DNA of 64,000 nucleotides from Entomortierella parvispora E1425 (taxonomy: Eukaryota > Fungi > Mortierellomycota): positions 1,178,001-1,242,000 of the forward strand of contig BQFW01000007.1 in NCBI GenBank assembly GCA_020891255.1. Direction: 5' to 3'. Under the pieces are notes generated by a model that was given only the letters and a program-made list of their open reading frames with translations, was not told the origin of the DNA and did not search any database. This document shows positions 19,050-60,224 of the stretch, piece after piece (the first letter of the stretch is position 1; every line of letters begins with the position of its first letter). Position numbers and translations under genes: made by a program.

Positions 19050-19084
19050 TCACGTGATAATAAAAACATTTTGGGATCACGTGA
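19050..19084. promoter_or_regulatory. Two TCACGTGA E-boxes upstream of tRNA-Gly (19050-19057, 19077-19084)
   Basis: Exact palindromes 57 and 84 bp upstream of the tRNA 5' end. The same motif occurs upstream of the other three tRNAs. Function is inferred. Confidence 0.6.
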
Positions 19085-19267
19085 CATGTATTTCGGCAAA
19101 TAAAATGTTGCAAAAAAAATAAACAGCCTTTGCATTTGTCGTCTGGACCACGCGGCTTTGCTCAGGTTGTAGATATTTTGGTCTCGCACTTCACTTCTTT
19201 GGCTTGACATAGCAAATAAAATGTTGCAAAAAAAAAAAAAAAAAAAAAAAAAAAGACATGTATTTCG
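19083..19267 (+). repeat. 159-bp segment with terminal 24-bp direct repeats and A27 tail, flanked by 13-bp direct repeat GACATGTATTTCG
   Basis: GACATGTATTTCG at 19083-19095 and 19255-19267; GCAAATAAAATGTTGCAAAAAAAA at 19096-19119 and from 19212; A run 19228-19254. Confidence 0.7.
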
Positions 19268-19346
19268 TCCTCCACGTCGCGGTGAGAAAAGCAGAATCGT
19301 TCTCAATCGCGATATCTTGATACAGTTCATTTTTCATTATTCTATT

Positions 19347-20961
19347 TTAACCGCCTTTTCCACCTCCCAGCAATTGCCCAATGCCTCCAGGAAGACCATT
19401 GGTGATTTGACCAATCTAAAACAGCAGTAGTAAGAAATAAAGGAAGATGAGTATCAAATTGTTCATATCGCGTTATGCACAAGAACTTTGGAAGCGACCG
19501 ACTTACGTCTGTAGGACAGGCAAAGTTGGCAGATTGGTTCTTGAGGCCTGGACTGACCGAGAAACCAAGAATCTTGAGCGTCAACTTGATGTCGTAGTTG
19601 ATTGTGAGCTGGCCATCGACGCCACCCAGAATACCACACCTGCTAAGGATGTCTTGAACCACTGTGAATCCTGGGTCCTGCTGGCGGTCATAGCTGGCGG
19701 TGATGGGGAACAGGATTTCTTTTGTGGACTTGCTCGGAAAGCTCGCATTAGTGATTTCACCTCCTCCCAATGCAGGGCTATATCCTGGATAGTAAGCCTA
19801 AGCCAGAGCAGAGCAAAAGAGACGCGATGATGTTTAGTTAAGCAAAAAGACCCGCGGCACCCATTGTTTCGCTCTAGAAATAAGCTGACACAAAACACGG
19901 CAAAGCGAGAAACATGGCGAAATCAAATAAAATCTGGTGCAGCCCACGTTTTCCCCTGCCAACTGGTCTGCACAGGGCTCACAGGAACTAAAAAAGAAAT
20001 GCCCTCGCCCACCTGGACACGCCCCCCGCGCAACTTAGCTCCATCTCTCTCTCTTCTCCTGTCATCATTCCAAACAGTGATGCTCTCTTCCACGACGCCT
20101 TTTTGTCAACAGCCTCTGCAGTTGTACGCGCCCTAATCTTACCGTGGCGGCAATCTTTTCAAAGTTAAAGCCAATTGGATTCGGGTTCTTGACTTGGATT
20201 GTTGCCACGAAATTGATGGCCAGAGTCGTGTTGCCCTGATTGAATGCAAACGTGGGTTCGCCTTGCAGGCCCAAGTAGTCAACCGTAGGGATTTTGAAAA
20301 CTGTCAAGACAATAACGACTAGGACAATAATGGCCAGCAGGATGAGAAGGAAGAAGCAGCAAGTAACTCTGCCGCAGGTGGACCGAATGCAAGGGAAACA
20401 AGGCAGACATTTCGACCGTGGCCTTTCCTCCTTCAACGCCCTGCTCTTGTAACTGTTGCTCTGCATGCTGCTCGGTCGACTGCTGCCGCCCGCGCCACTC
20501 CTGTTCTGCTGGGTTGCCAAAAGCTGCATCGAATTACGCTCATAGCCATTGTAGTACTTTGGTTGTTGTAGTTGCTGTTGCTGTTCTGAGGCGTCATAGT
20601 AGCCTCCTGTATTATTGTTAGCGCCGTTGCCTCCTGCAGCGTGATAACTGTCGTAGTACTGATCGTGATCATATTGGCCTTGGGGATGCTGCTGTTGATT
20701 TGCAGCGTAGTGGTGGTATTGCTCCTGCTGTTGCTGGTAATCTGGGATATAGCCGTTGGTATCGTACGGTATACCGTATGTGTCTCGTTGCGCATTGCGC
20801 TGCCGGGCAGACGGCATTTCCTGCATGGCGTAGTTGTCGGGCTGTTGGTTGGATCTCATTGCATCGAGAGTGGGAGTAGAATAGTAAGAGTCATTGTGGC
20901 CGTCGCCATTTGAGTTTCCATTGTTGTTCTCTTGGTAGTGGTTGTTGCTCCTGTAGCTCAT
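19347..20961 (-). CDS. Single-pass membrane protein with LEA_2-like beta-rich ectodomain; exons 20961-20143, 19797-19507, 19415-19347
   Basis: Q/N/Y-rich cytosolic N-terminus, Cys-rich juxtamembrane segment (KCLPCFPCIRSTCGRVTCC), TM helix, then IQVKNPNPIGFNFEKIAAT-AYYPGY, typical of LEA_2-like domains. Introns are GT-AG. Confidence 0.82.
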
Positions 20962-21747
20962 GGTGAGGACGTTGTTCTGCTTTCTGGCCTTTCGAGGTTG
21001 GGGTGGACTGGGATGGGGTGAAGAGAGATGGGATGCAGGACGGCAGTTGCGGTCATGTGCGACACGGGGCAAAGGGAATGCAAAGGGCAGAGTCCAGAAT
21101 AGCAGACAGTGAGAGCAGATGATGACGATGCGATGCAAAGGAATGAAGGAATGAAGGACAGAAAGAGAGAAAAGCAAAGACAAAGAGAGAAGGGAAGAGG
21201 GAGAGCTATGTCAGTCGTGTCAAGGACAATAAATAGAGTGTGTGTCTGCCCGGTTCCTGTGCCTGGCAGAGCGTCTGTGCGTCTTTCGGTGTCTTTGGGT
21301 CGGAAATCATTTGTCGGTAATTTATGAATCCGATCCGTGCTGAATAGGGCAAGATGGTCCTTTCGTCCCTTTTCTGTTCTCTCTCTCTCTCTATTCTATC
21401 TCTCCTCTTCTCTTTCTGCCTGTCCCTTCTCTTCTCTTGTCTCTCTTGTCTTCTCGCTTCGGATTATGGCAATTGTAGCAAAGTGCCGATAGACCACCCA
21501 GCCGACGGAGATCCACTTCCCATCCGATAAAGTATGACACGTGCTTCTCCGGGCATGGAGAGCCGATCGATCTCCCTGCAGGGATGTCTATACCAGGCTT
21601 GTTGGATGCCTCATTCTGGACGTCCACCTCACTCTCACACTTTTTTTTTTTGTTCGAGATATTTTCATTTGTGGATTGTGGATTGTAGATTAGGAAAAAA
21701 AAATTACATAAACATTCAAAGCTCTGCTGAGCTCTTGGCTGGCATCC

Positions 21748-22072
21748 TCAGTACGGGGTGATAGACGTCCCTAGCCCTGCATTGACTCGCGCTACGTTGT
21801 TGTCATTGAAGATATTCGTCATCTTGAACACATCCCCCACCCAATAATAATTGACGCGGATCCGGAACCAGTAGGGCCATCGGGTATAGCAATAGTTGGC
21901 AAGCGCATCCAGGAGAGAACCGTTGGTCTCATCTGCCAGTGGGCCAATGCAAAGCTGGGGTATCTCTCCCTGCTTCAAAGATGCAAGGATGTCAGACTCC
22001 AGAATGCTCAGGCTAAAGAGAGGGATTTTTTTTTCGATCAGTAAAGATGAGCTTTGAATCAAACAACAAGTC

Positions 22073-22107
<35 letters not shown>

Positions 22108-23958
22108 TGAAGACTCACTTGATGTCGATCTGCTGCCATAGGATAAAAGATCCATCCGTGGGGGGGCCTTGCTCGCACCAGCTAAAGTAACTCGCGTTCA
22201 GTTGGTCCGGTTGAGTATCCTGACTTGTGTACGTAAATCCATCCAGCTTCCATGTGTCTTTTTGGTTGGCCCATGTTGGTATAGGTGGCGGGATCGAATA
22301 ATAGGTGTCGCTCATAAAAATCATCAGTCGCTGGTTGGCCAGGATCATTTCCCTCAATGTAGGCCAAGGCTCGCTGAGCGATGAGCGGGGCCACATAAGG
22401 AGATCGCCAGTTGGGAGCGTGAAGTACTGCAAAACTTTTGCCACGAGAGCTTGAGCCATTAGATCTTGAGGGCCGTCAAATTCGTTGAATTCAATGGTCA
22501 AAACTTCGTAAGGGTTGGCGAGCAAGAACGCAAGTATGGCGCTGAGAACCGAATCCAACGTGACGCCAATGGCTCGCGTCGGTCCGTACCCATGGCACAT
22601 TACAACTTCGGTGTTGTTGTTGGTCAGACAAGTTCCGAGATCCAAAAATCGAATGCCTAAAGGAAGGAGCAAAGAAGGTCAGAAATGAGGGAGAGAATGA
22701 CGAGAGAGGAGCATAGCAGAAGGCGCTGGCTCATACCGTCAGACAATTGCTGGGCCACTGTATGGTCCGGCTCATTCTCCCAAAAGCAAGAGATAGCCCA
22801 CGCAGGAATAACCTCAGAGCAGGCTGATCCCCAGAGTGTACAGATCTCCAAACTACTTGTACAAATATCCTCCCAGCCAAGACAAAACGACTCTGTTGCT
22901 TCACATGCGGACGAGAATGCGCCGCAGAGCCAGTGAAGCCAGTTTGGCAGAGCTTTCAGACAAGAGTTGGAGTATTGGGTGCAGCGTATCTCCCATCCTT
23001 GGGTACAGTTCTGGGCTTGTTGAGCACACACAGTTGTAGTCTCCAGACAAGTGTTGATTGCAGTCGTGCAATCGTATTCAAGATTATAGGTGGCGCTGTT
23101 GTGCGTTCCTGGGTAGGTCTGAGTAAGAAGATACGCTATCAGTTAGCTTCAGTTCACTGCCCTTTGTCTGCATGTCCATGCGCTTACCACTTGATTATAT
23201 CTTAGGTCACAGATATCTGAACGTCCATTACACAGCATGTCCGACGAATTGACGACAGCCATGGATCGAAAACCAGACAGAGGCATGTTGACCGCCTTTG
23301 CTCCTTGAGGGATACTCGAATTGCGCCGATGAAGCATTGGGTGATTACTTTCCTCTGACAGCAGTCCACGCTTTTGATTCACCGTCTCTTCGTTACTGCA
23401 GCTGCTCATTGCATAATCAGGGACATGCTCAACGCTACCCGTCCCAAAAAGAGCACCAGCGTCGGGTTGTCGCCGCAAAACACATTCGGGATTAAGACGA
23501 GGATCTTGTAGTAGTGCCTTTCGCTCTTGGTCGGGTGTCAATGGTGGTCGCTGCTTTGGTTGTGGTTGTCTCTGCGGCTGGGTCCTCCATATTGGTGAAT
23601 CCATGGGTGAGGATCCAGAAGCTGAGGCTATAACTGGTGACAAGACAATACATAATCCGACCATGACCCACATACACAGAAGGATAAGAGTGCTTCTCTG
23701 ACGGCCACCGCGACATCCCCTCGTTTTTCTCAGTACTGTGCCGGTGTTGATCCCGGTCGCGGACCCAGCCCTGTGTATCGCTCTGACAGAGTGACTACAG
23801 AGGAGGACCACGTCGACTCTGCATGATGCCTCCTCATGCATAGAACAGGATGCCGCATCACTCCTCCTTCTTCTAGCCTCTTTCAATTGTTGCGAATACT
23901 GGACCATTGTCTTGTCCGAGACTGCCCCATTCTGTGGCCGTTGAAAGGGACAAGACAT
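21748..23958 (-). CDS. PLC-like phosphodiesterase (PI-PLC X-domain-like TIM barrel), probably secreted or membrane-anchored; exons 23958 (or 23907)-23188, 23118-22737, 22656-22119, 22012-21748
   Basis: LCNGRSDICDLRYNQV-TYPGTHNS, QQLSDG-IRFLDL, VMCHG and NPYEVLTIEF motifs; hydrophobic N-terminal segment. Confidence 0.88.
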
Positions 23959-25302
23959 CCCCCGCTGTGGTTTTTTGTTTGATCCTGGTTAGATCTTGGG
24001 TCACAGGGCTATTCACCTGACCTTTGTCGAACATCTTCAAGCACTCACCTGTTGACTCTGTATGTCGGTGTCTGTCGACCTTATCTCCATGGTTTTCTTC
24101 TTTACTTCTTTTCGTGATCAAGTTGCTTTAGGTGTATGGGCGTGGGAGTCAGAAAGAGGACGGCGAATGGTGATACCAGGGTTTGGGACAATGATAAGCT
24201 TGCTGAGCTTTGCCCTGCTGCAGAATCAGTTGGAGCTGGATCCTCGTCGAAAGCGAAGGGTCAATTGAAGATCAGAGAAAAATGACCAGGCCTTTTGAAG
24301 CCAGACGGAATGGGCGACGGGAAGGATAGTGAACAAGCTGCACGAAAGAAAGATTGAAGAGGGGGAAAGAAAAAAAAAAGAAAGAGCAAAAGAGACAAGT
24401 TGAGCACTCTGTGCACTCCAGTGCACAGACATCCACCCCCTTCCAGCAACCCCCTTTGACAAACAAAGGTAAACGGAAAAAAATAAGAGAAAGGTCAACA
24501 GCAAACGCGCCAGTGTTGTCAGCTGTCGTGCAAAATAAAGCTTTGTTGCAAGCTTTGTCCGTGGGGCTGTCTTCGTGGACCCTGTCTTTTAGCTTGTCCA
24601 TCAATCACCCATGGCCATGGCAAAAAAAAGGGGGCGAGTGTTACCCAAAAAACCAACATTCTGGGCAGCACAGAAAACAACAGAGAGGAACAACCATTGC
24701 AGCGAACAGCGGACAGCAATTGTTCCTTGCTGTTGTTGCTTTGTTTTTCGGAAGAACGGTTACGCGGTTGCTCCACCCACCTTGCACATTGACGACGTTC
24801 GTCCGCTCGCTTTTTTCAAAAGAGTGCTTTTCCGTCATCCGTGTCCCTGCATCCTCGTTTTCTTGTGGGGAATAGACAACAAAAAGTCATACGACTCCTA
24901 TCTCTCTCTGTACAATTGTCACCCTTTTTTTTTCAACGTGCTAAAATCGACGCATGGCCACCTTGTCAAGCAGGAGATATAGGGAAGGAGGCAGGGAGGG
25001 AGATGTGCAAGTGCGCGTGTGCAACGTGCCGTCGCTGTTGGAGTTTCTGACATTCACCCCCTGGTTCCTGAGTGACGGACAATCTAGAGTCCGAAAAAAA
25101 CGCGTGACGGGGCGTGTGTTTTTTACGTTCATCAATGGTACGCTGATCTTGAAGGTGAAGCCTCGTCAAGAACCGAGTTGACGCAACTACGGTAGTTTGC
25201 TTTGGTATGGCCAATAAAAAATACCCCCATTTATAAATTCTTTGAGATAGAGAGGGAAGAAAGGTTGAGGATGAAGGGGAAGAGAGGAGGGAACAGGGTA
25301 TT

Positions 25303-27945
25303 CTAATCCAGCTTGACGTTGCGATATATCCTCATAATGAACTTGTTGGCTGCGAAATGGCCGACAGATCCGAGCATCAAAAAGATGGCCATGCACGCCA
25401 AAGCCGTGTTGCCAAAGTAGAAGCTCGTCTGGAAGAGACCATACATTCTACAATGGAAAACAAAGAGATAAAGGTTAGCATGCTGTCGTTACGAACAACT
25501 GACCCCTCCCATCCCCTTTCTCTCCCATCTTGATACTAGATAACTTACTTTGTCTTTTGCATAAAGTAGTACACAGCATAGATGTACACATAAGCTGCTG
25601 TCGATCCACAGGTTGCCATGCTCATCCAGTGCCACCTGTAGTCCTCTGTATTGATTACAAAGTATGTGCTCACGACAGTGACCGAAGCCGTCACAAGCAT
25701 CACGATACCAAAGACCAACAATCCAAAGCCATAGACGTAGTAGACCTTGTAGCTCCAGAAGGACGTGAACAAGAAGTAAATTTCAATGAAGATGGATGCG
25801 AAGGGCAGAATACCCCCAAGCGCAATGACCACAATTGGCTCCGCGTACCAAATCTTTTCAGGAATGGGGCGTGGAATTGGGTGCACTCTGCAAGGGAAGT
25901 CTGCCTTTCCAGCATAGTTCTTTCCGATAAGAGTTCCGACAAATGTCAGCTACGAAGCAGCAAATCAAAGTAGTAGATTTGTTAGTATGAAGCTTCAAGC
26001 TGAAAGTCATTTCTTCTTCTACAGTTCGCAAGAAATTCATACTGGCAGAACAATAAAAATCCAGATGGCCAAAAGAGCAACCATCGTTCCAAAAGGGATA
26101 GCACGAGAACTGGTGTAGTAAATCGCCACGGCATTGTTCAAACCCGTCACTAGGACAACAGCACCAGGCCAGAATGCAGCTGTCAAAAACATGGCGCGAA
26201 CCCAGTCCCGTCCGCCATATTGAGAATACTGACTCGAGCTGGAGTATCCAGAAATCATCGAAGTAAAGGCATAGATGAAAATGGTTGCGGTCATAATACT
26301 GGCTCGTTCTGTCCATTCCTGTCCAAAGATAGTATAGAGTATCACAAAGAACGATGTCCATGCGAGCTGGTGTCCTGTACCGACAAAGGCAGCAAACGTC
26401 ATTGGGTTTGCTGGCGGTCTGAACACATCGCCGTGGATCTGCTTCCAGCCATAGTCGTCGCCTAGGTCATGGTCCTGTCGTTTATCAAGAAAATAACAGA
26501 TGAATGTTAACTGATAGGTAAGAATTGTTGCATGGCAAGCCTTAAGATGTAGATCTTCGAACAACAAAGAAATCATACAAAGTCATTCAGTCCAGTTTCC
26601 TTGTCATATCTGGCAAAATCCCTCCTGAGATGGCGGATCCACATTGCGCTCACGAATCCAGTCAGGAACAGCACCATCATGAGCGAATTGAAGATTGAGA
26701 ACCAGTGAATCTAGCCCAATATGGCGGAACGAAAGCTGGTTTAGTCGTGATCGTGTCATCTATTGCACACGTCCACATGCGACAAGCTCCCACCTTGTTT
26801 TCAAAGAAATCAGAGTCCAAATACCGTTCAAATCTCGATTTGAATGGCGTTTGAGTCTCTTGCCAGGTTACAGAGTATGTAAACTCTACATTCATGCCAT
26901 TCTGACTACTGACCAACTCCACAGGTGACTCAGCCTTGACTCTGGCAGAAATAACCTGGTTCCCATTATACTCGAATTCAAATCGCTGGTGTGTGAAAAG
27001 AGAGACGCGTCCTGTTGTATCATCCTTGACTCCAACCATTCCTATTGAGTAGCAAGCAGTATCAGGGTCAGGACATTTGCCTTTGTTCTCCAAAACTTCA
27101 AAATCTATCGCCTGCAGCCATTCACGGCTCTTACCCCAGACAGGAAGGTCATCGATGAAGTACTGAAACCAGTAATCGTGCGAAATTGCATAAGAGAAGG
27201 TCTTGATTTCCTGGGATGTCAATGTGAATTCGGGGCAAATTGGCAGCACTACCTGGTTCTCTATAAGATGAAAGTCGATGGTTCGTACATCATGGTGATG
27301 AAGGACAAAAGTGTCGGTAAGCAAAGCCCGCGCGCCTTTTCCTCGCTATAAATAAACGGCGGCGGTAGCAAACACAAAGCAAAAAAAGAGAATTGCTCAA
27401 CGTACGTGGAAACTTGATGGGAATGCCTGAGTTGATGAGCTCCATACCCAAGAGTGCCTCACCCAAGGTCTCATGGCGATGTTCTACTTTTCCTTTTCCT
27501 TTACAGTATGGAAGCTGAAAGTATTCGTACGTTTCCTGGCGATTGCTAATTAGAGGAAACGAAAGAATAAATAAACGTGTCAGAGCTCTGGAAGTAAAAT
27601 TAAAAAAAGCCGACACCCAACTCTTGACTGGGTTCACTTCCTCTCCTGTGGATCGTATTACTCCTGCTGCCGCGCTTGTCCTATAAACTTACCTCAAGGG
27701 ACCGACCGAGTTTGCCCACACAACAACATCCTCAGCTGCCGTATACTACTCGAATGAAAAGAGGCAGCCGTAAAGGAGGTCAGCTTTCAAATTAGAGACG
27801 CAATGCCCTCCAGCCTGCAGAATCTGTGATTCAATCGCGCTACCTTATGGCTATGCTCGTCTGCTGCGACATTGATAACAGCAAGAGCCGAGACGAGTGC
27901 TGCGGACAAGAATCCTTTGATGGCCCAGCCGTTAGCGCGTCTCAT
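25303..27945 (-). CDS. TM9SF3: Transmembrane 9 superfamily protein (TM9SF3/EMP70 family), multi-exon
   Basis: Signal peptide [30 protein letters not shown], then [72 protein letters not shown] and [12 protein letters not shown]...NVKLD stop. Confidence 0.95.
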
Positions 27946-28107
27946 GGGTGCAATGTATTATCTGTTCCTGAATGGAATGAAAGAATCCTGCTCTCTCCTT
28001 GTGATGTCCGAAAGGAGTATGTATCCAATGGCGGGTGCTGCAATAATGGTTGACAGTCGACGATAACCGAGATCGCTGAGATGACGAGAGTAGCAAAGGA
28101 GGATGGA

Positions 28108-28179
28108 TGGAGAGGGTGGAGAGGGTGGAGAGGGTGGAGAGGGTGGAGAGGGTGGAGAGGGTGGAGAGGGTGGAGAGGG
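28108..28179 (+). repeat. Minisatellite (TGGAGAGGG)x8
   Basis: Eight perfect 9-bp units, read directly from the sequence. Confidence 0.95.
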
Positions 28180-28333
28180 GTGGAAGAACGAATGGAATGG
28201 AATCTATTGCGCCCAAAGAAGGCTGGTGACTGTGCTTCTGATACCATCTTCGTTCGCCAAAGGAGACGACCTGCATTCCACGCCATCAAAGAAGCGGCCA
28301 ATTCTCTCTCTCTGTCTCTCTCTATGTCTCTCT

Positions 28334-28430
28334 CTCTCTTCACTCGCACTCCTTTCTTTCTTGTCTCTCTTCACTCGCACTCTTTTCTTTCTTGTCTCTC
28401 TTCACTCGCACTCTTTTCTTTCTTCTCTCT
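28334..28430 (+). repeat. 31-bp tandem repeat x3 (CACTCGCACTCYTTTCTTTCTTGTCTCTCTT)
   Basis: CACTCGCAC recurs at 28341, 28372 and 28403. Confidence 0.9.
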
Positions 28431-28825
28431 CTTCTCTCTCTCTCCTTACATCCTGAGCTACACAATCCTACGCGCTCAATGTCCATACACCCCTGGGTGT
28501 AAAAGGCTATCTAGACAACTGTTGTAGGAAGGAAGAAGGTGCTTATTCAAAAGAACTTGTCCTCTAGCGCAGGGCGTTGCACCACACTCAAGGTTCAGAA
28601 TCATCAGCAAGTGAACTGTTCAAGGACAATCGGCATCGCAGGACAATCAGCATCACGGACCGACAAGCGAGCCTGTCGTGGATCCGCGATTTTTTTTTTT
28701 TTTTTTTTTTTTTTTGGTGGCAATCACCAGAAGAGGCACCTTTTCACTGCATGCAAAAGAAGCATTCTCGTTCAGTTCATTCACTCCATCCTTTTCATTC
28801 TCCCATCTGGATTTCACTCTCTTCC

Positions 28826-43066: not shown

Positions 43067-43137
43067 TGCGTGGTCCGGGAATCGAACCCGGGTCTACCGC
43101 GTGGCAGGCGGTAATTATACCACTAAACCAACCACGC
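43067..43137 (-). tRNA. tRNA-Gly(GCC), second identical copy
   Basis: Same 71-nt sequence as 18923-18993. Confidence 0.97.
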
Positions 43138-43203
43138 TTTTGCTCAATGGAAGCTGATTTCCAAATTCATCTAAGTTCCTGATTCTGAGAAAGACCGTGG
43201 AAG

Positions 43204-43229
43204 TCATGTGACCTTGTGTGATCACGTGA
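43204..43229. promoter_or_regulatory. E-box pair upstream of the second tRNA-Gly (TCATGTGA 43204-43211; TCACGTGA 43222-43229)
   Basis: 67 and 85 bp upstream of the tRNA. The first reads GTCACATG on the minus strand, matching the RTCACRTG CDEI consensus. Confidence 0.55.
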
Positions 43230-43663: not shown

Positions 43664-44614
43664 CTAGGCGTTGGCATTGGCATTAGCCTCCACGTTCAGG
43701 TTAGCGATCAGATTCAGGACACCACCCAAAAGCGTGGAGCGTTTCTCGGTGCAGGCTGTGGGGACTTCCTGGTTGTAGAAATGAGCCAGACGGGGTTGGA
43801 ATTCGTTCTCGAGGTTGACGCGCAAGGTCAGGACAGTGTGGGCATCATTCGAGTCCTTGCAGCCTGTCTTGCACACGAATTTGGAATCCACACTCGCCGC
43901 CACATCAATACCAGCCTGTGCTCCAGAGGGATCGGCACATTCGGTGCAAGACTGAGCAGCTGGGACTGGGGCTGGAACTGGAACGGGGGCGTCAGCGGGA
44001 GCAGGGGCTGGCTCGGCAACAACGGGGGCGGGTGGCGGAGGAGCAGCAGGCTCAGGAGCTGGGACGAGATCAGTGTTGGTCATCTTCTCAGTACAATCCT
44101 TTGACAAGCCCTCAGCATTGACGTTAGCCTGGATGCGATCCAAAACCATGTTGGTGATGAGGATATCCAGCTCAGCCATCTTGTTCTCAATCTCCTCCTT
44201 CTTGGACCAAGGCACGTCCATATTGGAATTGGAAGTCACAGTGGCCTTGATCGCAGGGGCAAGGACTTCGGGTGAGCACGCCTTCTTGGCCTCATCAATC
44301 TTGCCCTGAACAGCCACGGTAAGCGCGGCCTTTTCTTGGGGAAGGTCCTGGGTACCCGAAGTAACCTTGGCAGTATCGATCTCAACCATAAGATTATCAA
44401 GATGGTTTTGGGCAATGGCGGAGTAATGGTCTGCGGAAGCCTTCACGATCAAATCCAAGGCAAGTCCATCTGTATGGGTACAGTCAGCGCAACGTTTGGT
44501 GAGAACGTGGGCAGTAGCATCAACCTGGGTAACGTCTTGAGAGATCAGAGGCGCAGCGGACGCTAGAGTGGCGAGAGCGGCCGAGATCAAGAGAGTGCAA
44601 GAAGAGAACTTCAT
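43664..44614 (-). CDS. Secreted Cys-containing protein of unknown function, 316 aa, single exon
   Basis: Signal peptide MKFSSCTLLISAALATLASA, probable Kex2 site LTKR-CADC, helical regions, Pro/Ala linker, Cys pairs. Confidence 0.88.
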   Translation of the reverse strand: MKFSSCTLLISAALATLASAAPLISQDVTQVDATAHVLTKRCADCTHTDGLALDLIVKASADHYSAIAQNHLDNLMVEIDTAKVTSGTQDLPQEKAALTVAVQGKIDEAKKACSPEVLAPAIKATVTSNSNMDVPWSKKEEIENKMAELDILITNMVLDRIQANVNAEGLSKDCTEKMTNTDLVPAPEPAAPPPPAPVVAEPAPAPADAPVPVPAPVPAAQSCTECADPSGAQAGIDVAASVDSKFVCKTGCKDSNDAHTVLTLRVNLENEFQPRLAHFYNQEVPTACTEKRSTLLGGVLNLIANLNVEANANANA

Positions 44615-52181: not shown

Positions 52182-54306
52182 ATGACCTCAGTGCTACAAT
52201 CTCTGAGAACTCGCGTGCAGTCAATGGGCTTGACGTTCATTCTCGGCTTCCTCCTCTGTATCTTTCAATCCTCCGAGTCAATTTTAGTCAAGCTCGCAGG
52301 CAATCGACCAGAACCTCACCCAAGTTCGGCAAAACTCTTGTTCCTGGCTGAGCTGTTGAAGTTGTTGAGTAAGTACAGTAGCAAGCCAACAAGCTTCTCT
52401 ATGAGAAAAAGAAGCGCGCAGAAACAAGACTCTATGTTACCTTTGACCAGCAAAAAAAGAAAAGGAACACACCACTGTGGAGAAGACAGAAGGAAACACG
52501 GAAGGCAAGGCATCGGTGCACCTTGTGTTTGACGCTTGTGCCATCTTGCAAATGTGTCCATGCAGTGTGGAGCAACCACAAACCCCAGCACCAAGAGCAC
52601 TTGATGAGGTCTTCTCTCATCTCTCACTCTCCAGCGAATTGTCAAAAACACAACCCATCCAGCACCAAGCGAGACTTAAGAAGGGGGAAAATGAGCCAGG
52701 ACAGGACCAAAGAACGGCTCAAAGGAAAGGCGGGGCTGAAGGAACAGTGCCTTCGAACAGCCAAGCGGGAAACGGCAGAAGGGGACGCGATGTATTTTTG
52801 GTCGTGTGCGGGGGAGGAAAAGATATTTTTTCTCAACTGCTCTGCTCTTGTGCAACGATCGTGGTTCGGATGTCGTGTGGTGTTTACTGTTGCAGCACAC
52901 GACCAATGTTCCCATTTTAGTTGTGTGGTCATTCATGCTTTACGCCCACCTCCGACCCTTCAGTCTCCAGTTCTGGGTGACGTGAAGTTGTTCCAGGGAT
53001 TGCATCATTAACGCCACCATATTGTCACTCTCTAGTTTCATACGCCCTCCTCTCCGTTGAGCGGAAACACGTCGTTGGCTTTGGACAGTTGCTTCGGAGA
53101 AGGTGTTGCAAGAAAGGCGCTAAATGCGGTCGTTCCAATGGAGACGCAGAGATGCAACAGCAACAACAACAGCAACAACATCAACAGCTGGACCAGGAGG
53201 AACGTAGAGGAAAACGGCTCTTAAGTGATACCAATGACGACGAAGACGATGACGAGACTGAAGATATCGAATCCCCGGTTACCCCTACCTCCACAGATCG
53301 ATCAGAACGGTCAGCCGACTGCAGCTTTCCCCCGATTCTCCTCTTTGCGGTTCCCGGGGCCATCTACTTTTTCAACAACAACCTCACATTCGTGTTGCTT
53401 TCGCTCATGCCTGCACCCACCTACGTTGTGTTGTCCAACCTCAAGATTCTCACCACGGGATTTCTCTCGTACCTGTTCTTGCACCGACTTTTGACGACCC
53501 CCCAATGGATCTCGCTGGGGATTTTGTTTTTGTCGACAGCGGTCTCGCAGGTGGATCTGGAGAAGGGACTGAGTCTCTCAATCTCGATCCAGGCCTTCAT
53601 GCTCATGATGCTATTCTGCTCCCTTTCCGCGTTTGCATCCGTGTTCTCTGAATACGTGATGAAGGACAAGTTTGCCAAGGAATCGATTCATTTGCAAAAC
53701 ATGAAGCTCTACATGTTTGGCATCCTCTTCAACGGATTGACCTACCTACTCACCCCTGCGACTGCAACAGCCGGAGGAGCTGCAGTGGAAGCAGGTGGAT
53801 TCTGGTCAGATATTGCACCGATTCACTTTATGATTATTATGGCGTACGCTTCCCTGGGCTTGGTCACCTCGGCCATTATCAAGTTCTCGGGTTCGATTAC
53901 CAAGGTTTACGCGTCGTCCATGTCCATGTTCTTTGCAGCATTGGTGTCCTGGCTGTTGTTGAACGACCATTTGACGGTCCTGTTCTTTGTTGGATGCTTT
54001 GGATGCTGCTACGCCCTTCATCTCTACTACCGCGCACCATCCACCAACGCCGCAACAACTTCAGAATCATCCAACGGTACTGCCGTGTCTGGTGAGGATG
54101 AGGAAGAGTTGCTGGAGCGCAACAATGGAGAGTCTGCAGGCCGGCACTCGACATCCTCCTCCTCCTCTACCTTCTCTACCACTTTTACGAACTCATCACC
54201 CACCTCCACACAACATGCCCCGCTGTCTTCTGTGAAGGTGGTAGATCGCCATGAATATCTCTCCTTGGACACCATTGATGACCATGACGATGACAACAGG
54301 AGGTAG
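52182..54306 (+). CDS. Nucleotide-sugar transporter (SLC35A-like); exons 52182-52368, 53036-54306
   Basis: Splice gives FLAELLKLL-ISYALL; LFAVPGAIYFFNNNL, YVVLSNLKILTTG, QWISLGIL, FASVFSEYVMK, IHLQNMKLYMFG, GLVTSAIIKFSGSITK. Confidence 0.92.
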
Positions 54307-54467
54307 TCCTTCCCCTATCGGTATACCTTCCTAATAGCACCCGTCCCATGAATCCCTCCATCCTCACTTGTACAATAAACCGCTCAAAAAATGAATAAAG
54401 CAACAGACAAAGAAACGTGTATTATTGATTATTCTAGGGTAGCTTGCGGTCAGGTCCTCTTCCAATG

Positions 54468-54767
54468 CTACACCGCCTCTACGTTGTTGTTACGTTTCCA
54501 GCACTCTCGAAAGGCCGTCATGGCGTCCTTGCAAGCTCGCCAGTCGTGTGTTTCGGAATAACAGTTTTGGAGAGCTTCGTTCTCGGCGGCACAGCCTGTC
54601 CGTTCAATCCGCTTCTCGTACTCGTCCTCGTCTTCCTCCTCCTCCTCTGCACCCTCTGGCTTTTGTGGGCGCTGATGTGGCTCATGAGGACGGGCTGTCG
54701 GCGCCCATTCGGGATCGTCCTTGTGCTGATCAGTTGAGGACGAGGAAGATTGCGCTGATTTGGACAT
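54468..54767 (-). CDS. COA4: Cytochrome c oxidase assembly factor 4 (twin CX9C protein)
   Basis: RIERTGCAAENEALQNCYSETHDWRACKDAMTAFRECW, two CX9C motifs with the DWRxC signature. Confidence 0.9.
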   Translation of the reverse strand: MSKSAQSSSSSTDQHKDDPEWAPTARPHEPHQRPQKPEGAEEEEEDEDEYEKRIERTGCAAENEALQNCYSETHDWRACKDAMTAFRECWKRNNNVEAV

Positions 54768-55023
54768 TAGGTTTTTAGAGGAGGAAAAGAAAGTTGTGGG
54801 AATGAATTGCTTGAAGCAAGAGTTGAAGAGGACGGATGGGTCTCGACGAACAAGGGTAATGCGAGAAGAGGAATGAAGGGACTTTTTTTTTTTCCCCTTT
54901 TTTTTCCTTGTCCGCAAGAGAACGCGGGTTGATCTGGGGAGGTTTTTTTTTATGTCTTCAATCGTCGTTTATTCAATATGAACCAAAATGAGATGATCCG
55001 AATCGTCCTTTTTTTGCAGCACC

Positions 55024-56701
55024 TTAGCTGAGGATTGCCAGGACCACAATGCCCGCTACCACGGATACAATCAACAGAAGGTAGCACGATTTTTTGCGTG
55101 CGTTCCGTTGATGAATCGCCGCTGTTGTCAATTCCTCTGAAGCGGCATTTGTGCTCATACTGATAGACGTGACATTGTTCTCAATTGAATCTATTCAGAG
55201 GGAACGAAAAAGAAAAGGTGAGTAGATAGATCATGGCTAGATAACCTTTGCGCACTGGCACGTGGCGCTTACCGAGCATGCTTCCTTGTTCGTTGACCAT
55301 AGTGCCCAGGTCGCGGAAGATCTCGTTCAGCTCGGTAATACCATGTTCAATCTCCCGAATCTCTTCCTCGCGTTGAACAATCATGGACTCGTTGTATTCC
55401 AGCTCATTGTCGACCACCATCAATTGCATCCTTCGCTGGCTATCTTGGACCAAAGGTTGTTCTCCAGAAGCACTAGCATCCTCATCCCTTAGAGAATTAA
55501 ACAAGCCGATTATTAGAATGAGCAGTTATATTGACATATCGACATGAGGGGGGTGAGCTTTGGAAAAGGATCATTGCTCCGCACTTACTCGTAATCATTT
55601 CGCACGTTCGACTTTCGTGCCTGGTCCACAAAATTGCGCTGCGTCTCTGCAGACACTCTCTGTACTTTTTGGAACTCAACCAACACCCTCTGAAAGTCCT
55701 TGGATAGCTTTTGGTACTCGATTTTTTTCTATGTTAGAGAACAAACTTGAACTCGTTAGTTTCCTCGTGGTCATTCGCTTAGGCCATGACCTATTCCAAT
55801 GTACTCTAGCAACGTTGTTGATTGCATGAGCTTTAGGTCTTTTGATGGTTAATTCTTACCCCGGTGGTGTTATCGAACCTTGCAAGGTCCTTGACGTCCT
55901 GGCTGGTATCCTTGACTTGCAAACGTGTCTCTTCGGTGATATCATGACTTGATGCAGAAGCAAGAGAGAAGAGGATTAGCAATTGCAAACGAAGGTTTAG
56001 CCGCCGATAATGAAATGACGTTGACAACACAGACGTCCCTGTGGTCAGGTCAGGAGATAATTTTTTTGAAGTCGAAGAATTCGCCCAAAAAAAACATCGG
56101 GGAGAGACAAACGCCAAGAGAAACCCGAGATGCTTACAGCTTTGTCCGCAATTCCTCTGTATCCTTGTGGGTGCCCAAAAGGGCAACGAGTCGCTGTATT
56201 GATGACACGTTGCTATTGATCTTGAAGACCTGCTGCGAGATTTGCTGCACCCGGGTACTGAAAGCCTGCGCCGCGTCGGCTGAATGAAGAGAAGAGAAAG
56301 AAATGAGACACGCACGAAAAGTCAGTGGTCATGGTCATTCGCCGCGTTGTCTTTTCCTGAGTGAAGTCCGACTCCTGCGAGTTATGGAGTCTTTATCGTG
56401 TTGTATCCCTGCACGTAACAGTCGTTTTCTGGTAAACATGCATTGTCTGGCGAGGAGTTTGGGCTCTTCGCTCAGAATGGCGTCTGTCCAGAAATCACTT
56501 CACAGAATGGGGTCCATGTTGTTCTTTCATTTAGTTCAAGAAGCAGAAAATGCTTGTTTGCTATTCCTTCCATGAGACCTTCCATGAATACTGGTGTGCA
56601 TGCACCTCCTTACCATTGTTATTTTCTCGAGGGTTGGGGTTGTTTCCACCAGTACGTCGATAGCCGCCTCCCTCTCCTCGTTCCAAGTCTGCAAAGGACA
56701 T
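55024..56701 (-). CDS. PEP12: Endosomal/vacuolar Qa-SNARE syntaxin (PEP12/VAM3, STX7/12-like), multi-exon
   Basis: MSFADLERG start, Habc helices (LGTHKDTEELRTKL), SNARE motif IVQREEEIREIEHGITELNEIFRDLGTMVNEQGSML, C-terminal TM ending LAILS stop. Confidence 0.92.
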
Positions 56702-56946
56702 TGTTCAAACAGAATGTGAAAATGTGAGTGTGTGTGGGTAAGGATGAATGTGTAATCTGCGCGGGTTGGAGGGACTTGAAGGAAGGAAGAAGGGGAAAAG
56801 AGAAAAGAGTTGATAATGAGGGAACAAGTGGAAGAGAAACGAATAAGTGAGGAAGCGCGAGGAAAAAAAAAGAGTTTTCGCACGACTGTAGAAAAAAATC
56901 GCTAATAGCTTTTAATTTTTCCCTACTATTCTTCATTCAGGACGCA

Positions 56947-58438
56947 TCAATCATCTGAATATCTTTCTACGATCTTGATCTTGCAGTCGTTCTCCAAAAT
57001 ATCCTTTGTCTCGTCCGTCATATCGACCTGCACCAGCTTCTGGAGCTTGGGCCAATTCACCTGAACCCAACGAGCCTCTGCTTCACCCCACACTGATTCC
57101 CAGCCAGAAAAGCCGCCTACAAAGGACCTTAAACGTCCAAGAGTCCTCAAAGAATCCAACCCTACTTCGCCAGCCGACAATGTGAAAAGCAGTTCCCCTG
57201 ACATGTACATATTTAGCGACTCGAGTTTGACGAGCTCCGATAGCCGAGAGAGGACCATGGCCTGCGTGGGGATAGGGCCGGCAAAAATGAACCTTAGGCG
57301 CAACTTTTTCAAGTCTCTACAGACCCAGGGATTGTCTTCTGCTAAGATATCCGAGGTCCATATCTCATATCCTTTAAACACCTCCAGCTTTGGCATGGAG
57401 CAGAGAATGGACTGTATGGCGGGGCCAGGCAGGTTCTTGCAGTTATGAAGCTTCAGGACCCGGAGGGTTGTCAAATGGCGAGGGGATAGGCCCTTCAGTG
57501 TGGTCCAAGCATCCAGGCCAAACTCGGAGCCAGGCAGACAAAGTCCAACCAGTCGTGGAATCCACTCTACCACTTTTGAAAAATCTTTCAGTTGGAACGA
57601 CTGCTGCGGCAAATCAAGGAACTCAAGTCTCCTCATCCAGCGACAGTCGGCCGATTGCCTGAGCTCGCGCGCCAGGAAATACATCGGCCCCCTCTCCCTG
57701 TCACTACCAGGAGATCCCGTAAACCACCGGAGATGGATCAGGTTACATCGCTTGATGAGCCAAAGGTGACAATCCTGGACGTGAGTGCTGTCAAATGAAG
57801 TCCCGACAATGGTGAGTTCCTGGATATTAGACGATGGTAGGGATTGGTTCATTAAATCGGTAATAGAGCTAGCTTGGTCGAACCATGGGCCTGCCAAGCC
57901 AAGAGTATCGAGGCGAGACCACACCTTCTCGTACATCCGAGTCAATTGATCAGAACACTCTGGCAAAGGCGCCTTCCAAGCATACAGAACTCGAAGCTTC
58001 TGGCATCCAATTATGGCATCCAAGAACTCGGTTGAAAGGGATTGCTCAGTAGAGAGACCCATCAGAGTGTGTCGATGCCGATGTACCATGTCAGCGGTGG
58101 CTTTAGATCCGTCCAGGACTCGACTGAGGACCAAGTTGTTCAGGTTCGGAAAGAACACCTCTCCTCGATCATGATTCTGAACATAGACCCGGCGGACCAG
58201 CGAAGAGTACGCGGGCCCAATCCGGAGAGGTAATCTGCTCGCTCCAGAATTTAAAAACTCAATATTGGACCAGATCCGAGGGACTAGCACATGGTACCAT
58301 AGATGACAAACACGAAGACAGGTAGTCACGTCTGTTGGGCTCAAATACTTTCCAACCACCATGACAATTTCAGGAAGTTCAAGTGGATAGGGTCGAATAT
58401 GTTCTTGCTGTTCACAGGATCCTAAAAAAAAAGGCATT
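56947..58438 (-). CDS. Intact F-box/LRR protein, single exon
   Basis: PLELPEIVMVVGKYLSPTDVTTCLRVCHLWYHVLVPRIW (F-box), LRR-like repeats, DNPWVCRDLKKL, and C-terminal WGEAEARWVQVNWPKL. Confidence 0.9.
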
Positions 58439-58742
58439 GTGGAGAGCGTAGAGAGGAATTGTAAATGGCGAAGGAGTTGGAATGAATTGCATTGCTTCAC
58501 GTGGCACAGTCGATTTTTTCCAGGCGCGTACCGCTCGCACCATGTCCACTTTTTTTTCCCCCCCTCGATCGTCTTACCTTGTACCTAGTGCAACTAGACT
58601 TCGCAAGAAATAAAAATCAAGCCGATAACCATGTCGTTGCGGCGATGGTCTATGGCAAAAGGCAAGGTCAGTGGACAAGAGACCCAAAAGCAGGGTCTTC
58701 CATCGCAAGAAAGAGTAGCAAAAGGTAACAAAAAAGAATTTG

Positions 58743-58814
58743 TGGAGCAGCTGGTGATTGAAACCAGGGCCTCTCGCATGCAAAGCGAGCGCTCTACCAC
58801 TGAGCTACAACCCC
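58743..58814 (-). tRNA. tRNA-Ala(TGC) with atypical T-stem (U53-A61) and U6/U67 mismatch
   Basis: GGGGTTGTAGCTCAGTGGTAGAGCGCTCGCTTTGCATGCGAGAGGCCCTGGTTTCAATCACCAGCTGCTCCA folds to a cloverleaf with G3:U70 and A73; T6 terminator downstream. Functionality is uncertain. Confidence 0.85.
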
Positions 58815-58869
58815 TTAATTCACATGATATCCAGAAGTTATGATCGACTAAGATTCAGCGGATCATATG

Positions 58870-58900
58870 TCACGTGACGATCACTTTGAACATCACGTGA
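58870..58900. promoter_or_regulatory. Two TCACGTGA E-boxes upstream of tRNA-Ala (58870-58877, 58893-58900)
   Basis: 56 and 79 bp upstream; an additional TCACATGA sits at 58820-58827. Confidence 0.6.
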
Positions 58901-59064
58901 AGATGCTGCGGTGTTGCCAAGCGACCAAAAAAAGGCAGGGTTGGTGCTCTCTCCGCAACGCCGCCTCAAGGGACAGCTGGGAACATGCAACTGCGCACTA
59001 ATGGATCTGCGCAAACAAAAGCTATTGGTTCACTCTTGGTCAACTGTGATCTTCAACTGGAATT

Positions 59065-60006
59065 TTACTCGATTTTGATATCAAAATGCTCCCACTCTGC
59101 CTCTGTGAATTCAATCCCAAAGAATTCCTTGAGAATATTCTGTCTCTGATCCTCCGTCTCAATATCAATACTCATGACCGTGCCATTGCTATCCCTGATT
59201 TTGAACGACTTGTTCATGAGAAGGTTATATTTTCCATCCAAGGTTCCCTGAAAGACCCAAAATTGACCATAGAAAGTTGACTTAGGTGAACAGCTGGACC
59301 AATAGTTGTTGATTTCACAATCGATGGCGTAGTATTGTCGTTCTGTGAAGGCGTAACAGGGCGTCCATTTCTCACGACCGCCCTTGTCCTTGTCCTCCAT
59401 GCCCATAAATTCTTGGACCTGCCAATATTCCTCTCCAGAGTGTCCCAAAATGTGAGGTTCCTCCAAGTTATGAAACGCCTTGACCATCCTCCGTCGATGA
59501 CCAAAGAATTCGACTTCAAAGCCCTCTTCCAACTTGAGGGGATAGAAAGACGAGGCTCCAAACCCGATATCAAAGACGTATTTAGAGTTGTTGTCCTCTG
59601 CAAACCGGATGATCGTAACTCGATGGGTCAGACCTCGAAAAGAGATCGGGTCGTCGGGTTGGCGGGGTTTGCACATCCGGGCAAGTGTATATTGGGTAGT
59701 GAACCCCAAACCACGAAGTAATTCAAAGGCCAACTTGTTGAGCGAAAAGCACCATCCTCCCCGGCGTCGATTGACAACACGATCGTAGATTGCATCCAGC
59801 TCTATCTCGACTGTGCGAGACTTTGTGGCTCGGAGAGAAAGCAGCTCAAAAGGTATAGAGGTCACACATCGGTAGTGCAGTTCGCGCAGCGTGTCCAGAG
59901 TGGGTTCTGGAAGGACATTGGCGTGTTTGAAAGGATACCCAATACGCTCGAGGATGGCAAATATCTGCTCCTGTGAAAAGTGCTCTTCCTTTATGACAGG
60001 CACCAT
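59065..60006 (-). CDS. NAT: Arylamine N-acetyltransferase, single exon
   Basis: SIPFEL, RRRGGWCFSLN (catalytic Cys), LTHRVTII (His), YVFDIGFG (Asp). Confidence 0.94.
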   Translation of the reverse strand: MVPVIKEEHFSQEQIFAILERIGYPFKHANVLPEPTLDTLRELHYRCVTSIPFELLSLRATKSRTVEIELDAIYDRVVNRRRGGWCFSLNKLAFELLRGLGFTTQYTLARMCKPRQPDDPISFRGLTHRVTIIRFAEDNNSKYVFDIGFGASSFYPLKLEEGFEVEFFGHRRRMVKAFHNLEEPHILGHSGEEYWQVQEFMGMEDKDKGGREKWTPCYAFTERQYYAIDCEINNYWSSCSPKSTFYGQFWVFQGTLDGKYNLLMNKSFKIRDSNGTVMSIDIETEDQRQNILKEFFGIEFTEAEWEHFDIKIE

Positions 60007-60124
60007 AAGGGAAAGTGGGGAGAATGGGAAGGAGGGCTTTTTGCAGTGGAGCTTTCGGAAGGAAAGCCAAAAAAAAAAAAAGGAAAAGAGCAGTTGGCGC
60101 GTCCCGCGGCGGCGCCGATGAAGA

Positions 60125-60168
60125 TCACGTGATATAAATGTCACGTGATACAATCATATATCACGTGA
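60125..60168. promoter_or_regulatory. Three TCACGTGA E-boxes between the NAT start and tRNA-Phe (60125-60132, 60141-60148, 60161-60168)
   Basis: Exact palindromes starting 93, 77 and 57 bp upstream of tRNA-Phe, with a TATAAA-like element between the first two. Confidence 0.6.
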
Positions 60169-60217: not shown

Positions 60218-60224
60218 GCGACCT

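What the first reader, a model, noticed from the sequence alone, without database searches (positions are those of the whole stretch)
19050..60168. Every tRNA gene in the window has 2-3 RTCACGTGAY-type E-boxes about 50-95 bp upstream: candidate bHLH-driven upstream control system for Pol III genes
Seen: eight exact TCACGTGA palindromes at 19050, 19077, 43222, 58870, 58893, 60125, 60141 and 60161, plus TCAYRTGA variants at 43204 and 58820. All lie on the 5' side of the four tRNA genes (three isotypes, both strands), spaced 16-27 bp apart. All eight are preceded by a purine and seven are followed by a pyrimidine. At uniform composition the 8-mer is expected about once per 64 kb and the 10-mer about 0.25 times; by eye I saw none elsewhere. 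Established: RTCACRTG/GTCACGTGAC is bound by bHLH-ZIP factors (yeast Cbf1 at CDEI, USF, TFEB), and tRNA genes normally rely on internal A/B boxes. Inference: this lineage may use a Cbf1-like factor to open chromatin or recruit TFIIIB at tRNA genes. I do not know of such an arrangement described for fungal tRNA genes.
Basis: partly seen in the sequence, partly recalled or inferred. Interest (0 to 1): 0.82.

Follow-up and report, generated by a model that had tools for sequence, protein, structure and literature searches.

The report
E-box sites upstream of fungal tRNA genes
In this soil fungus (Entomortierella parvispora) and its relatives, most tRNA genes carry one to three copies of the palindrome RTCACGTGAY 50-100 bp upstream, a motif found almost nowhere else in their DNA. 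This points to an undescribed upstream control element for RNA polymerase III genes, probably read by a helix-loop-helix protein.

Summary
The window has four tRNA genes and eight TCACGTGA palindromes. All eight lie 53-90 bp upstream of a tRNA 5' end (expected 1.25 per window; 0 of 100 shuffles reach 8).

I extended the test to 312 kb of non-redundant Mortierellaceae-type DNA.
- All 21 exact 8-mers lie at -105 to -45 of a tRNA gene. That zone is 0.41% of the DNA.
- One-mismatch variants are 41-fold enriched in the same zone.
- 16 of 22 tRNA genes carry at least one box.

The boxes follow the tRNAs, not the neighbouring protein genes. A related species keeps them at the syntenic tRNA-Phe and tRNA-Ala. 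In Gryganskiella the same two tRNAs lie head-to-head, 136 bp apart, and share two boxes at the same distances. Podila, Linnemannia and Mortierella alpina keep the flanking genes but have neither the tRNAs nor the boxes.

Outside tRNA flanks, CACGTG is the most under-represented of all 4096 hexamers.

The binding protein (Cbf1/USF/TFE-type bHLH-ZIP) and the mechanism (acting next to TFIIIB) are inferred, not shown. I found no description in the literature library. First readers of this scan noted the same pattern in four other windows of this genome.

The parts
18923..18993 (-). tRNA-Gly(GCC), ordinary type-2 Pol III gene with A/B boxes and a TTTT run just downstream
19050..19057 (.). proximal box ATCACGTGAT, centre -60.5 from tRNA-Gly
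19077..19084 (.). distal box ATCACGTGAC, centre -87.5 from tRNA-Gly
43067..43137 (-). tRNA-Gly(GCC), second copy with an unrelated far flank
43204..43211 (.). variant box (GGTCACATGAC on the tRNA strand), centre -70.5; the same variant is kept in L007 and L022
43222..43229 (.). box ATCACGTGAT, centre -88.5 from tRNA-Gly
58742..58814 (-). tRNA-Ala(TGC)
58870..58877 (.). proximal box GTCACGTGAC, centre -59.5 from tRNA-Ala
58893..58900 (.). distal box, centre -82.5 from tRNA-Ala; 23 bp from the proximal box, the same spacing as in L032 and L038
60125..60132 (.). distal box ATCACGTGAT, centre -89.5 from tRNA-Phe; not present in the L032 orthologue
60141..60148 (.). middle box GTCACGTGAT, centre -73.5; aligns with a box in the L032 orthologue
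60161..60168 (.). proximal box ATCACGTGAC, centre -53.5; position conserved in L032 and in Gryganskiella (L038)
60171..60179 (+). ATTATATCC block directly after the proximal box, identical in the L032 orthologue; possible TBP/TFIIIB contact region (inference)
60218..60290 (+). tRNA-Phe(GAA)
59065..60006 (-). arylamine N-acetyltransferase gene lying between the two tRNAs. It is context, not part of the element: it is absent from this position in Gryganskiella, where the boxes persist

Best explanation
RTCACGTGAY boxes are a conserved cis-element dedicated to Pol III tRNA genes in Mortierellaceae. There are one to three per gene, with centres between about -53 and -100 from the mature tRNA 5' end. 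The tRNA genes keep the normal internal A and B boxes and T-run terminators, so the boxes add to the type-2 promoter rather than replace it. The most likely reader is a homodimeric class-B bHLH-ZIP protein of the Cbf1/USF/TFE kind (inferred). No box centre lies closer than -53.5, which is about where the upstream edge of TFIIIB would be. I therefore propose that the factor binds right next to TFIIIB and either stabilises or recruits it, or holds the flank open and insulated, so coupling tRNA transcription to a regulated factor. Shown: the motif, its exclusive position, its conservation and turnover, and its avoidance elsewhere. Inferred: the protein, the contact with TFIIIB, and the direction of the effect.
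For: (1) In the window, 8 of 8 TCACGTGA lie at -53 to -90 of the four tRNAs, which cover three isoacceptors, both strands and unrelated flanks. (2) I fetched 22 environmental loci using only the tRNA-Gly core sequence. All 9 TCACGTGA in them lie at -57 to -93 of that tRNA. (3) In the pooled 312 kb, 21 of 21 exact sites fall in the -105 to -45 zone, which is 0.41% of the DNA. One-mismatch variants occur at 7.0 per kb inside the zone and 0.17 per kb outside it. (4) In the syntenic orthologue L032 (its N-acetyltransferase is 80% identical), two tRNA-Phe boxes keep their positions while the spacers diverge. The tRNA-Ala boxes have moved but their number and 23-bp spacing are kept. (5) In Gryganskiella (L038) tRNA-Ala and tRNA-Phe lie head-to-head 136 bp apart with no protein gene between them. 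They share two CACGTG boxes at -60.5/-83.5 and -53.5/-76.5, the same distances as in E. parvispora. (6) Podila, Linnemannia and M. alpina keep the neighbouring transporter, CHCH and syntaxin genes but have no tRNAs and no boxes there. (7) Outside tRNA flanks CACGTG is the most depleted of 4096 hexamers (22 observed against 116 expected, counting both strands). It also ranks first in the named non-Entomortierella loci taken alone, and CACATG is in the top five. This fits a potent factor whose stray sites are selected against. (8) The half-site flank is a purine at -5 in 36 of 42 cases, and TCACATGA variants co-occur with exact boxes. Both match the RTCACRTG preference of Cbf1-type proteins (general knowledge). 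(9) There is precedent for a bHLH-ZIP protein acting on Pol III through TFIIIB: c-Myc binds Brf1 (PMC4482074).
Against: There is no binding, expression or chromatin data. No RNA run could be listed and the read-laying run returned only DNA contigs. Six of 22 tRNA genes in the wider sample lack a box (L009, L010, L013, L019, one L021 copy, L023), so it is not obligatory; those loci may also come from other lineages. The environmental loci have no taxonomic label. The sample is small and biased: tRNA-Gly dominates, and several loci are orthologues of each other. I could not run a genome-wide tRNA scan. The hexamer depletion was measured on mostly coding DNA and may owe something to codon effects. 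No candidate bHLH gene was identified in this genome. For tRNA-Phe the boxes also lie about 120-160 bp upstream of the divergent acetyltransferase start codon, so that one locus is ambiguous.
Confidence: 0.6

Rival explanations
1. The boxes act mainly as a barrier. A tightly bound factor stops Pol II reading through from the upstream gene, or stops nucleosomes or silent chromatin spreading, so the tRNA promoter is shielded rather than activated.
For: In three of the four window loci the upstream neighbour is a protein gene whose 3' end points at the tRNA flank: 20065-21183, 43664-44614 and the acetyltransferase 59065-60006, all on the tRNA's strand. Strong avoidance of CACGTG in mostly transcribed DNA is what a roadblock site would produce. 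General regulatory factors are known to do this in yeast (general knowledge).
Against: In Gryganskiella the two boxes lie in a 136-bp spacer between two divergent tRNA genes. No Pol II gene can read in there and no nucleosome fits, yet the boxes and their distances are kept. Two or three copies at a fixed distance from the tRNA suggest interaction with the Pol III complex.
Confidence: 0.22
2. The boxes are functional and tRNA-linked, but the reader is not a Cbf1/USF-type bHLH-ZIP. It could be an SREBP-like bHLH, a bZIP that accepts an ACGT core, or a lineage-specific Pol III accessory protein.
For: The sequence alone cannot identify the protein. ACGT-core palindromes are also bound by some bZIP proteins, and SREBP-type proteins accept ATCACGTGA (general knowledge). 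No bHLH gene was found in the DNA examined; the one pattern hit was a 25-codon chance ORF.
Against: The T at -4, the purine at -5 and the tolerance of CACATG are the classic class-B bHLH-ZIP signature (and general knowledge).
Confidence: 0.12
3. The boxes belong to the promoters of neighbouring Pol II genes, and the tRNA genes merely sit inside those promoters.
For: Three tRNAs lie just upstream of, and in the same direction as, a protein gene (methyltransferase, F-box-like, GDSL lipase). The tRNA-Phe boxes lie 120-160 bp from the divergent acetyltransferase start codon. An unchecked first-reader note reports boxes at a UTP4 gene elsewhere in this genome.
Against: The distance to the tRNA is fixed while the distance to the protein start codons ranges from about 120 to 460 bp. 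The neighbouring genes have unrelated functions. Dozens of other protein genes in 308 kb have no such site and no box clusters. The boxes persist in Gryganskiella without the acetyltransferase and F-box genes. The ribosome-biogenesis genes DBP10 and KRR1 have no box.
Confidence: 0.04
4. The boxes are passive passengers: they were copied along with tRNA genes by duplication, or are remnants or targets of tRNA-directed retroelements.
For: Window tRNA-Gly copy 2, L007 and L022 share a longer upstream block. First-reader notes report tRNA-targeting retroelements in this genome.
Against: Three isoacceptors have non-homologous spacers. Box number and exact position vary between loci. Boxes are kept or regained while the surrounding DNA diverges between species. 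The site is a short palindrome with no element-like context.
Confidence: 0.02

Closest known systems
Cbf1 sites (RTCACRTG: yeast centromere element CDEI; ribosomal-protein and rDNA promoters in Candida albicans)
   Same: The same palindromic core with a T at -4 and a purine at -5, and tolerance of CACATG. In C. albicans Cbf1 serves the translation apparatus, binding ribosomal-protein genes and the rDNA locus (PMC2834713).
   Different: Those targets are Pol II or Pol I genes or centromeres. Cbf1 is not reported at tRNA genes in the paper I read, which never mentions tRNA. Here the sites are almost exclusive to Pol III tRNA flanks, and the two ribosome-biogenesis genes I could check lack them.
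c-Myc/Max action on Pol III in mammals
   Same: A bHLH-ZIP protein stimulates Pol III through TFIIIB (Brf1). An E-box in the human 5S rDNA spacer is used by Myc-Max (PMC4482074).
   Different: At mammalian tRNA genes Myc is tethered by protein contact and no E-box is needed. Here a defined DNA site lies at a fixed distance from most tRNA genes.
Upstream TATA elements of tRNA genes in S. pombe and plants
   Same: A sequence-defined element in the 5' flank that supplements the internal promoter. According to PMC11547032, these are the only 5'-flank consensus sequences described so far.
   Different: Those are TBP sites at about -30 inside the TFIIIB footprint. These boxes are palindromic factor sites at -53 to -100, outside that footprint. 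TATA-like words in the -50 to -20 region occur in only a few of the 22 flanks here.
Type-3 Pol III promoters (U6, 7SK, vertebrate tRNA-Sec) with a distal enhancer bound by Oct-1/Staf
   Same: Ordinary sequence-specific transcription factors bound upstream enhance Pol III (general knowledge).
   Different: Type-3 genes lack functional internal promoters and depend on PSE and TATA elements. These genes have normal A and B boxes and no PSE-like element.

Membership tests
Class-B bHLH-ZIP E-box site (Cbf1/USF/TFE type) | Palindromic CACGTG core | tested here: met
   8 sites in the window and 21 in the pooled set
Class-B bHLH-ZIP E-box site (Cbf1/USF/TFE type) | T at -4 on both half-sites (TCACGTGA) and a purine at -5 | tested here: met
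   All 21 sites are exact 8-mers by definition; a purine at -5 is seen in 36 of 42 half-sites
Class-B bHLH-ZIP E-box site (Cbf1/USF/TFE type) | Bound by a bHLH-ZIP dimer in vivo or in vitro | not testable with these tools
   No ChIP, EMSA or proteomic data. No candidate gene was recovered
Type-2 Pol III promoter (tRNA gene) | Internal A and B boxes in a canonical tRNA fold, with a T-run terminator close downstream | tested here: met
   ARAGORN and Rfam scores of 62-70 bits. TTTT or longer within about 10 nt of the 3' end at all four genes
Upstream TATA element of tRNA genes (S. pombe / plant type) | TATA-like sequence at a fixed position around -30 | tested here: not met
   Only a few of the 22 flanks have a TATA-like word between -50 and -20, and not at one position. 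tRNA-Phe has a conserved ATTATATCC block
Type-3 Pol III promoter (U6-like) | Entirely upstream promoter (PSE plus TATA) with no need for internal boxes | tested here: not met
   The genes are standard tRNAs with intact A and B boxes. No shared PSE-like block is seen across isoacceptors
Pol II promoter element of neighbouring genes | Position and presence follow the protein gene, not the tRNA | tested here: not met
   Synteny: the boxes stay with the tRNAs in L032 and L038 and are absent where only the protein genes remain

The most novel reading that the evidence does not exclude
Mortierellaceae have turned a bHLH-ZIP protein into a near-dedicated upstream factor for Pol III tRNA genes. Its optimal site is reserved for tRNA flanks and purged from the rest of the genome (CACGTG is the most avoided hexamer). 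That would give these fungi a gene-external, factor-controlled switch for bulk tRNA synthesis, an arrangement not described for type-2 Pol III promoters in any eukaryote.
Probability: 0.5. Interest if true: 0.88.

Novelty: new variant of a known kind. Interest (0 to 1): 0.78.

Why it matters
tRNA genes are the textbook case of promoters that lie inside the gene. Apart from TATA-like elements in fission yeast and plants, no consensus element has been described in their 5' flanks (PMC11547032), and gene-specific regulators of tRNA genes are largely unknown.

A defined factor site at a fixed distance from most tRNA genes of a whole fungal family would give a simple handle on how upstream factors talk to TFIIIB and Pol III, testable by mutation and ChIP. 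It would also offer an evolutionary parallel to the Myc-Pol III link of animals, and a possible route by which nutrient signals reach tRNA synthesis.

There is a practical side as well. Pol III promoters for guide-RNA or tRNA expression in oil-producing Mortierella strains may need these boxes.

The genome-wide avoidance of the core hexamer is an unusual signature in its own right and deserves a proper genome-scale test.

Tried and rejected
- **N-acetyltransferase homologues for synteny.** Most were paralogous clusters in Podila, Lobosporangium, Benniella, Linnemannia and Gryganskiella, with no tRNAs. They were useless for synteny but served as about 190 kb of box-free control DNA.
- **Homologues of the F-box-like neighbour.** Only the L032 orthologue was found, because the gene evolves too fast.
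- **KRR1 as a synteny anchor.** Its exons are too short for the length rule of the protein search, so I used the nucleotide-sugar transporter instead.
- **Scans for further tRNA loci.** I searched the prokaryote genome collection and the viral collection with the tRNA-Ala, tRNA-Phe and tRNA-Gly cores, hoping for fungal contaminants. All four scans found nothing.
- **RNA evidence.** The sequencing-run tool was busy twice. It then listed only DNA-type runs and no RNA run.
- **Laying contigs of four runs on 57500-62500.** No population-level test of box conservation was possible.
- **Six-frame pattern search for a bHLH basic region.** The one hit, in L011, is a 25-codon ORF and was rejected as chance.
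- **A link to ribosome-biogenesis genes.** There is no CACGTG in the KRR1 or DBP10 promoter regions, so a shared regulon is not supported in this DNA.
- **Chance** is rejected. **Passenger or duplication origin** is rejected.


Full report
**Observation.** The window contains four tRNA genes by ARAGORN, and the same four by Rfam, with no other known RNA family.
- tRNA-Gly(GCC) at 18923-18993 (-)
- tRNA-Gly(GCC) at 43067-43137 (-)
- tRNA-Ala(TGC) at 58742-58814 (-)
- tRNA-Phe(GAA) at 60218-60290 (+)

The expected count is 1.25, and 0 of 100 dinucleotide-preserving shuffles reach 8. I read the four flanks in the tRNA orientation. The box centres lie at:
- -60.5 and -87.5 (Gly1)
- -88.5 (Gly2), plus a TCACATGA variant at -70.5
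- -59.5 and -82.5 (Ala)
- -53.5, -73.5 and -89.5 (Phe)

All eight boxes are preceded by a purine and seven are followed by a pyrimidine. The bare CACGTG core occurs only four more times in 64 kb, and never with both flanks. All four tRNA genes have normal internal promoter sequences and a T-run just downstream. They are ordinary type-2 Pol III genes with something extra in front.

**Source and neighbours.** The window is from Entomortierella parvispora, assembly GCA_020891255.1, contig BQFW01000007.1. The protein genes next to the tRNAs are functionally unrelated:
- an arylamine N-acetyltransferase between tRNA-Ala and tRNA-Phe
- a GDSL lipase
- an F-box-like protein
- a Methyltransf_32 protein

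In three of the four loci the DNA just upstream of the boxes is the 3' end of a gene, not a promoter.

**Independent sample.** I scanned JGI metagenome contigs with only the core of the tRNA-Gly sequence, so the scan was blind to the flanks. It returned 22 loci. Six are AT-rich: five are dense tRNA arrays and one (L008) holds a single tRNA-Gly, about 37 tRNA genes in all, with no CACGTG upstream of any. They evidently come from another lineage. Thirteen of the loci with 42-54% GC had enough flank to assess, and they hold 14 solitary tRNA-Gly genes. Eight of the 14 carry TCACGTGA. Every one of the nine copies in these loci lies at -57 to -93 of the tRNA.

As a control I used about 190 kb around paralogous acetyltransferase genes in Podila, Lobosporangium, Benniella, Linnemannia and Gryganskiella. 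This DNA contains no tRNA gene and no TCACGTGA at all.

I then pooled all non-redundant Mortierellaceae-type DNA (312,472 bp, 25 tRNA genes).
- All 21 exact 8-mers fall in the -105 to -45 zone of a tRNA gene. That zone is 1,294 bp, or 0.41% of the DNA.
- One-mismatch variants occur at 7.0 per kb inside the zone and 0.17 per kb outside it.
- 16 of the 22 tRNA genes with enough flank have at least one box.
- The position outside the 8-mer is a purine in 36 of 42 half-sites.
- No box centre lies closer than -53.5.
- No pairs or clusters of boxes exist away from tRNAs.

**Synteny.** An environmental relative (L032; its acetyltransferase is 80% identical) keeps the order tRNA-Phe, acetyltransferase, tRNA-Ala, F-box gene. 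Both tRNAs again have two exact boxes 23 bp apart, and tRNA-Ala has a third, ACACGTGA. In the tRNA-Phe alignment the two proximal boxes and a short ATTATATCC block are conserved in place while the spacers differ. In the tRNA-Ala alignment the boxes have shifted position but are retained. This is site turnover under constraint.

I used the single-copy nucleotide-sugar transporter 4 kb away as an anchor.
- Gryganskiella cystojenkinii keeps the neighbourhood (transporter, CHCH, syntaxin, lipase, KRR1) but lacks the acetyltransferase and F-box genes. There tRNA-Ala and tRNA-Phe lie head-to-head 136 bp apart. The spacer holds exactly two CACGTG boxes 23 bp apart, at -60.5/-83.5 from Ala and -53.5/-76.5 from Phe. 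These are the same distances as in E. parvispora.
- Linnemannia hyalina, Podila verticillata and Mortierella alpina keep transporter-CHCH(-syntaxin) but have no tRNAs there, and no boxes.

The boxes therefore follow the tRNA genes and not the protein genes.

**Avoidance elsewhere.** After masking the tRNA genes and their 130-bp flanks, CACGTG is the most under-represented of all 4096 hexamers in the remaining 308 kb. It is seen 22 times against 116 expected from an order-2 model counting both strands, and against 69 from an order-4 model. It is also first in the named non-Entomortierella loci taken alone. CACATG is among the top five. In the E. parvispora DNA alone the sample is small and CACGTG ranks 22nd. 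Most of this DNA is coding, so a codon contribution cannot be excluded. Even so, the result fits selection against stray sites for a potent factor, and it suggests the system is family-wide.

**Mechanism (inference).** A 10-bp perfect palindrome implies a homodimer. The T at -4, the purine at -5 and the acceptance of CACATG are the signature of class-B bHLH-ZIP proteins such as Cbf1, USF and TFE (general knowledge). From general knowledge of yeast, TFIIIB covers roughly 40 bp upstream of the start site, and the start site lies several bases before the mature 5' end. The empty zone from -50 to -1 and the pile-up of proximal boxes at -53 to -66 therefore place the factor directly against the upstream edge of TFIIIB.

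The Gryganskiella arrangement argues that the role is not only to block incoming Pol II or to exclude a nucleosome. It favours a direct effect on the Pol III complex. The precedent is c-Myc, which binds Brf1 in mammals, although without a DNA site at tRNA genes (PMC4482074). In Candida, Cbf1 serves ribosomal-protein genes and rDNA (PMC2834713). Here the two ribosome-biogenesis genes I could check, DBP10 and KRR1, have no box.

**Known or new.** Full-text searches found nothing describing this arrangement. I combined the motif, E-box, Cbf1, tRNA genes, TFIIIB, Mortierella and early-diverging fungi in various ways. [quoted passage not shown] I therefore rate this as a new variant of a known kind: upstream factor sites assisting Pol III.

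**Earlier notes of this scan.** First readers noted the same pattern in four other windows of this genome (s1-201082, s1-185163, s1-199077, s1-183393). These notes are unchecked leads, not independent evidence, and I could not read those windows.

**Limits.**
- There are no RNA, binding or chromatin data.
- The sample is small and dominated by tRNA-Gly.
- The environmental loci are unlabelled.
- Six tRNA genes lack boxes.
- The reader protein is unidentified.

Noticed in passing
L009:297-401 (-), L010:705-806, L012:195-297, L016:4376-4475 (-), L021:1207-1304; also L006: In six environmental loci the Mortierellaceae-type tRNA-Gly(GCC) is not followed by a T-run. A conserved element of about 95 nt follows instead, and the T-run comes after it. 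The element has a terminal stem and two hairpins with compensatory changes in 15 of 20 predicted pairs, and gives no Rfam match. It looks like a two-RNA Pol III unit (tRNA plus a small structured RNA), reminiscent of plant tRNA-Gly-snoRNA genes (from memory)..
   Followed up: partly
window 19096-19123 and 19212-19239: A 24-28 nt direct repeat (GCAAATAAAATGTTGC plus an A-run) occurs twice, 116 bp apart, starting about 103 bp upstream of tRNA-Gly just beyond the distal box. It looks like a target-site duplication around a short insert. This fits unchecked first-reader notes of non-LTR elements inserting about 90-107 bp upstream of tRNAs in this genome..
   Followed up: partly
L006:161-170 (-), L010:572-581 (+), L020:865-874 (-): The 10-mer AATTGGTGGC occurs upstream of three environmental tRNA-Gly genes, in the tRNA orientation, at about -53 to -121. 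One of them (L010) has no E-box. Only one other copy exists in 312 kb. It may be a second upstream motif or shared ancestry..
   Followed up: no
all fetched Mortierellaceae loci outside tRNA flanks (308 kb): CACGTG is the most under-represented of all 4096 hexamers (ratio 0.19 to an order-2 model), and CACATG is also in the top five. This needs a genome-scale test split by coding and non-coding DNA..
   Followed up: partly
L002-L005, L017 (and L008): AT-rich contigs (19-41% GC) carry the identical tRNA-Gly core. Five of them are dense arrays of 6-9 tRNA genes within 2-4 kb, with no E-boxes. This is an unidentified other lineage with a very different tRNA gene organisation..
   Followed up: no
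window 59065-60006 versus L038:7949-8230: The acetyltransferase gene lies between tRNA-Ala and tRNA-Phe in Entomortierella, and each tRNA has its own set of boxes. In Gryganskiella the two tRNAs are head-to-head and share one set. A gene has been gained or lost inside a divergent tRNA pair, and the boxes were re-established on both sides..
   Followed up: partly
window 18994-19006, 43138-43150 and most tRNA-Gly loci: The sequence CAAGCAAA(A), or a near variant, lies directly 5' of the tRNA-Gly in most loci whether or not they have boxes. It is probably the start-site region of this gene family..
   Followed up: no
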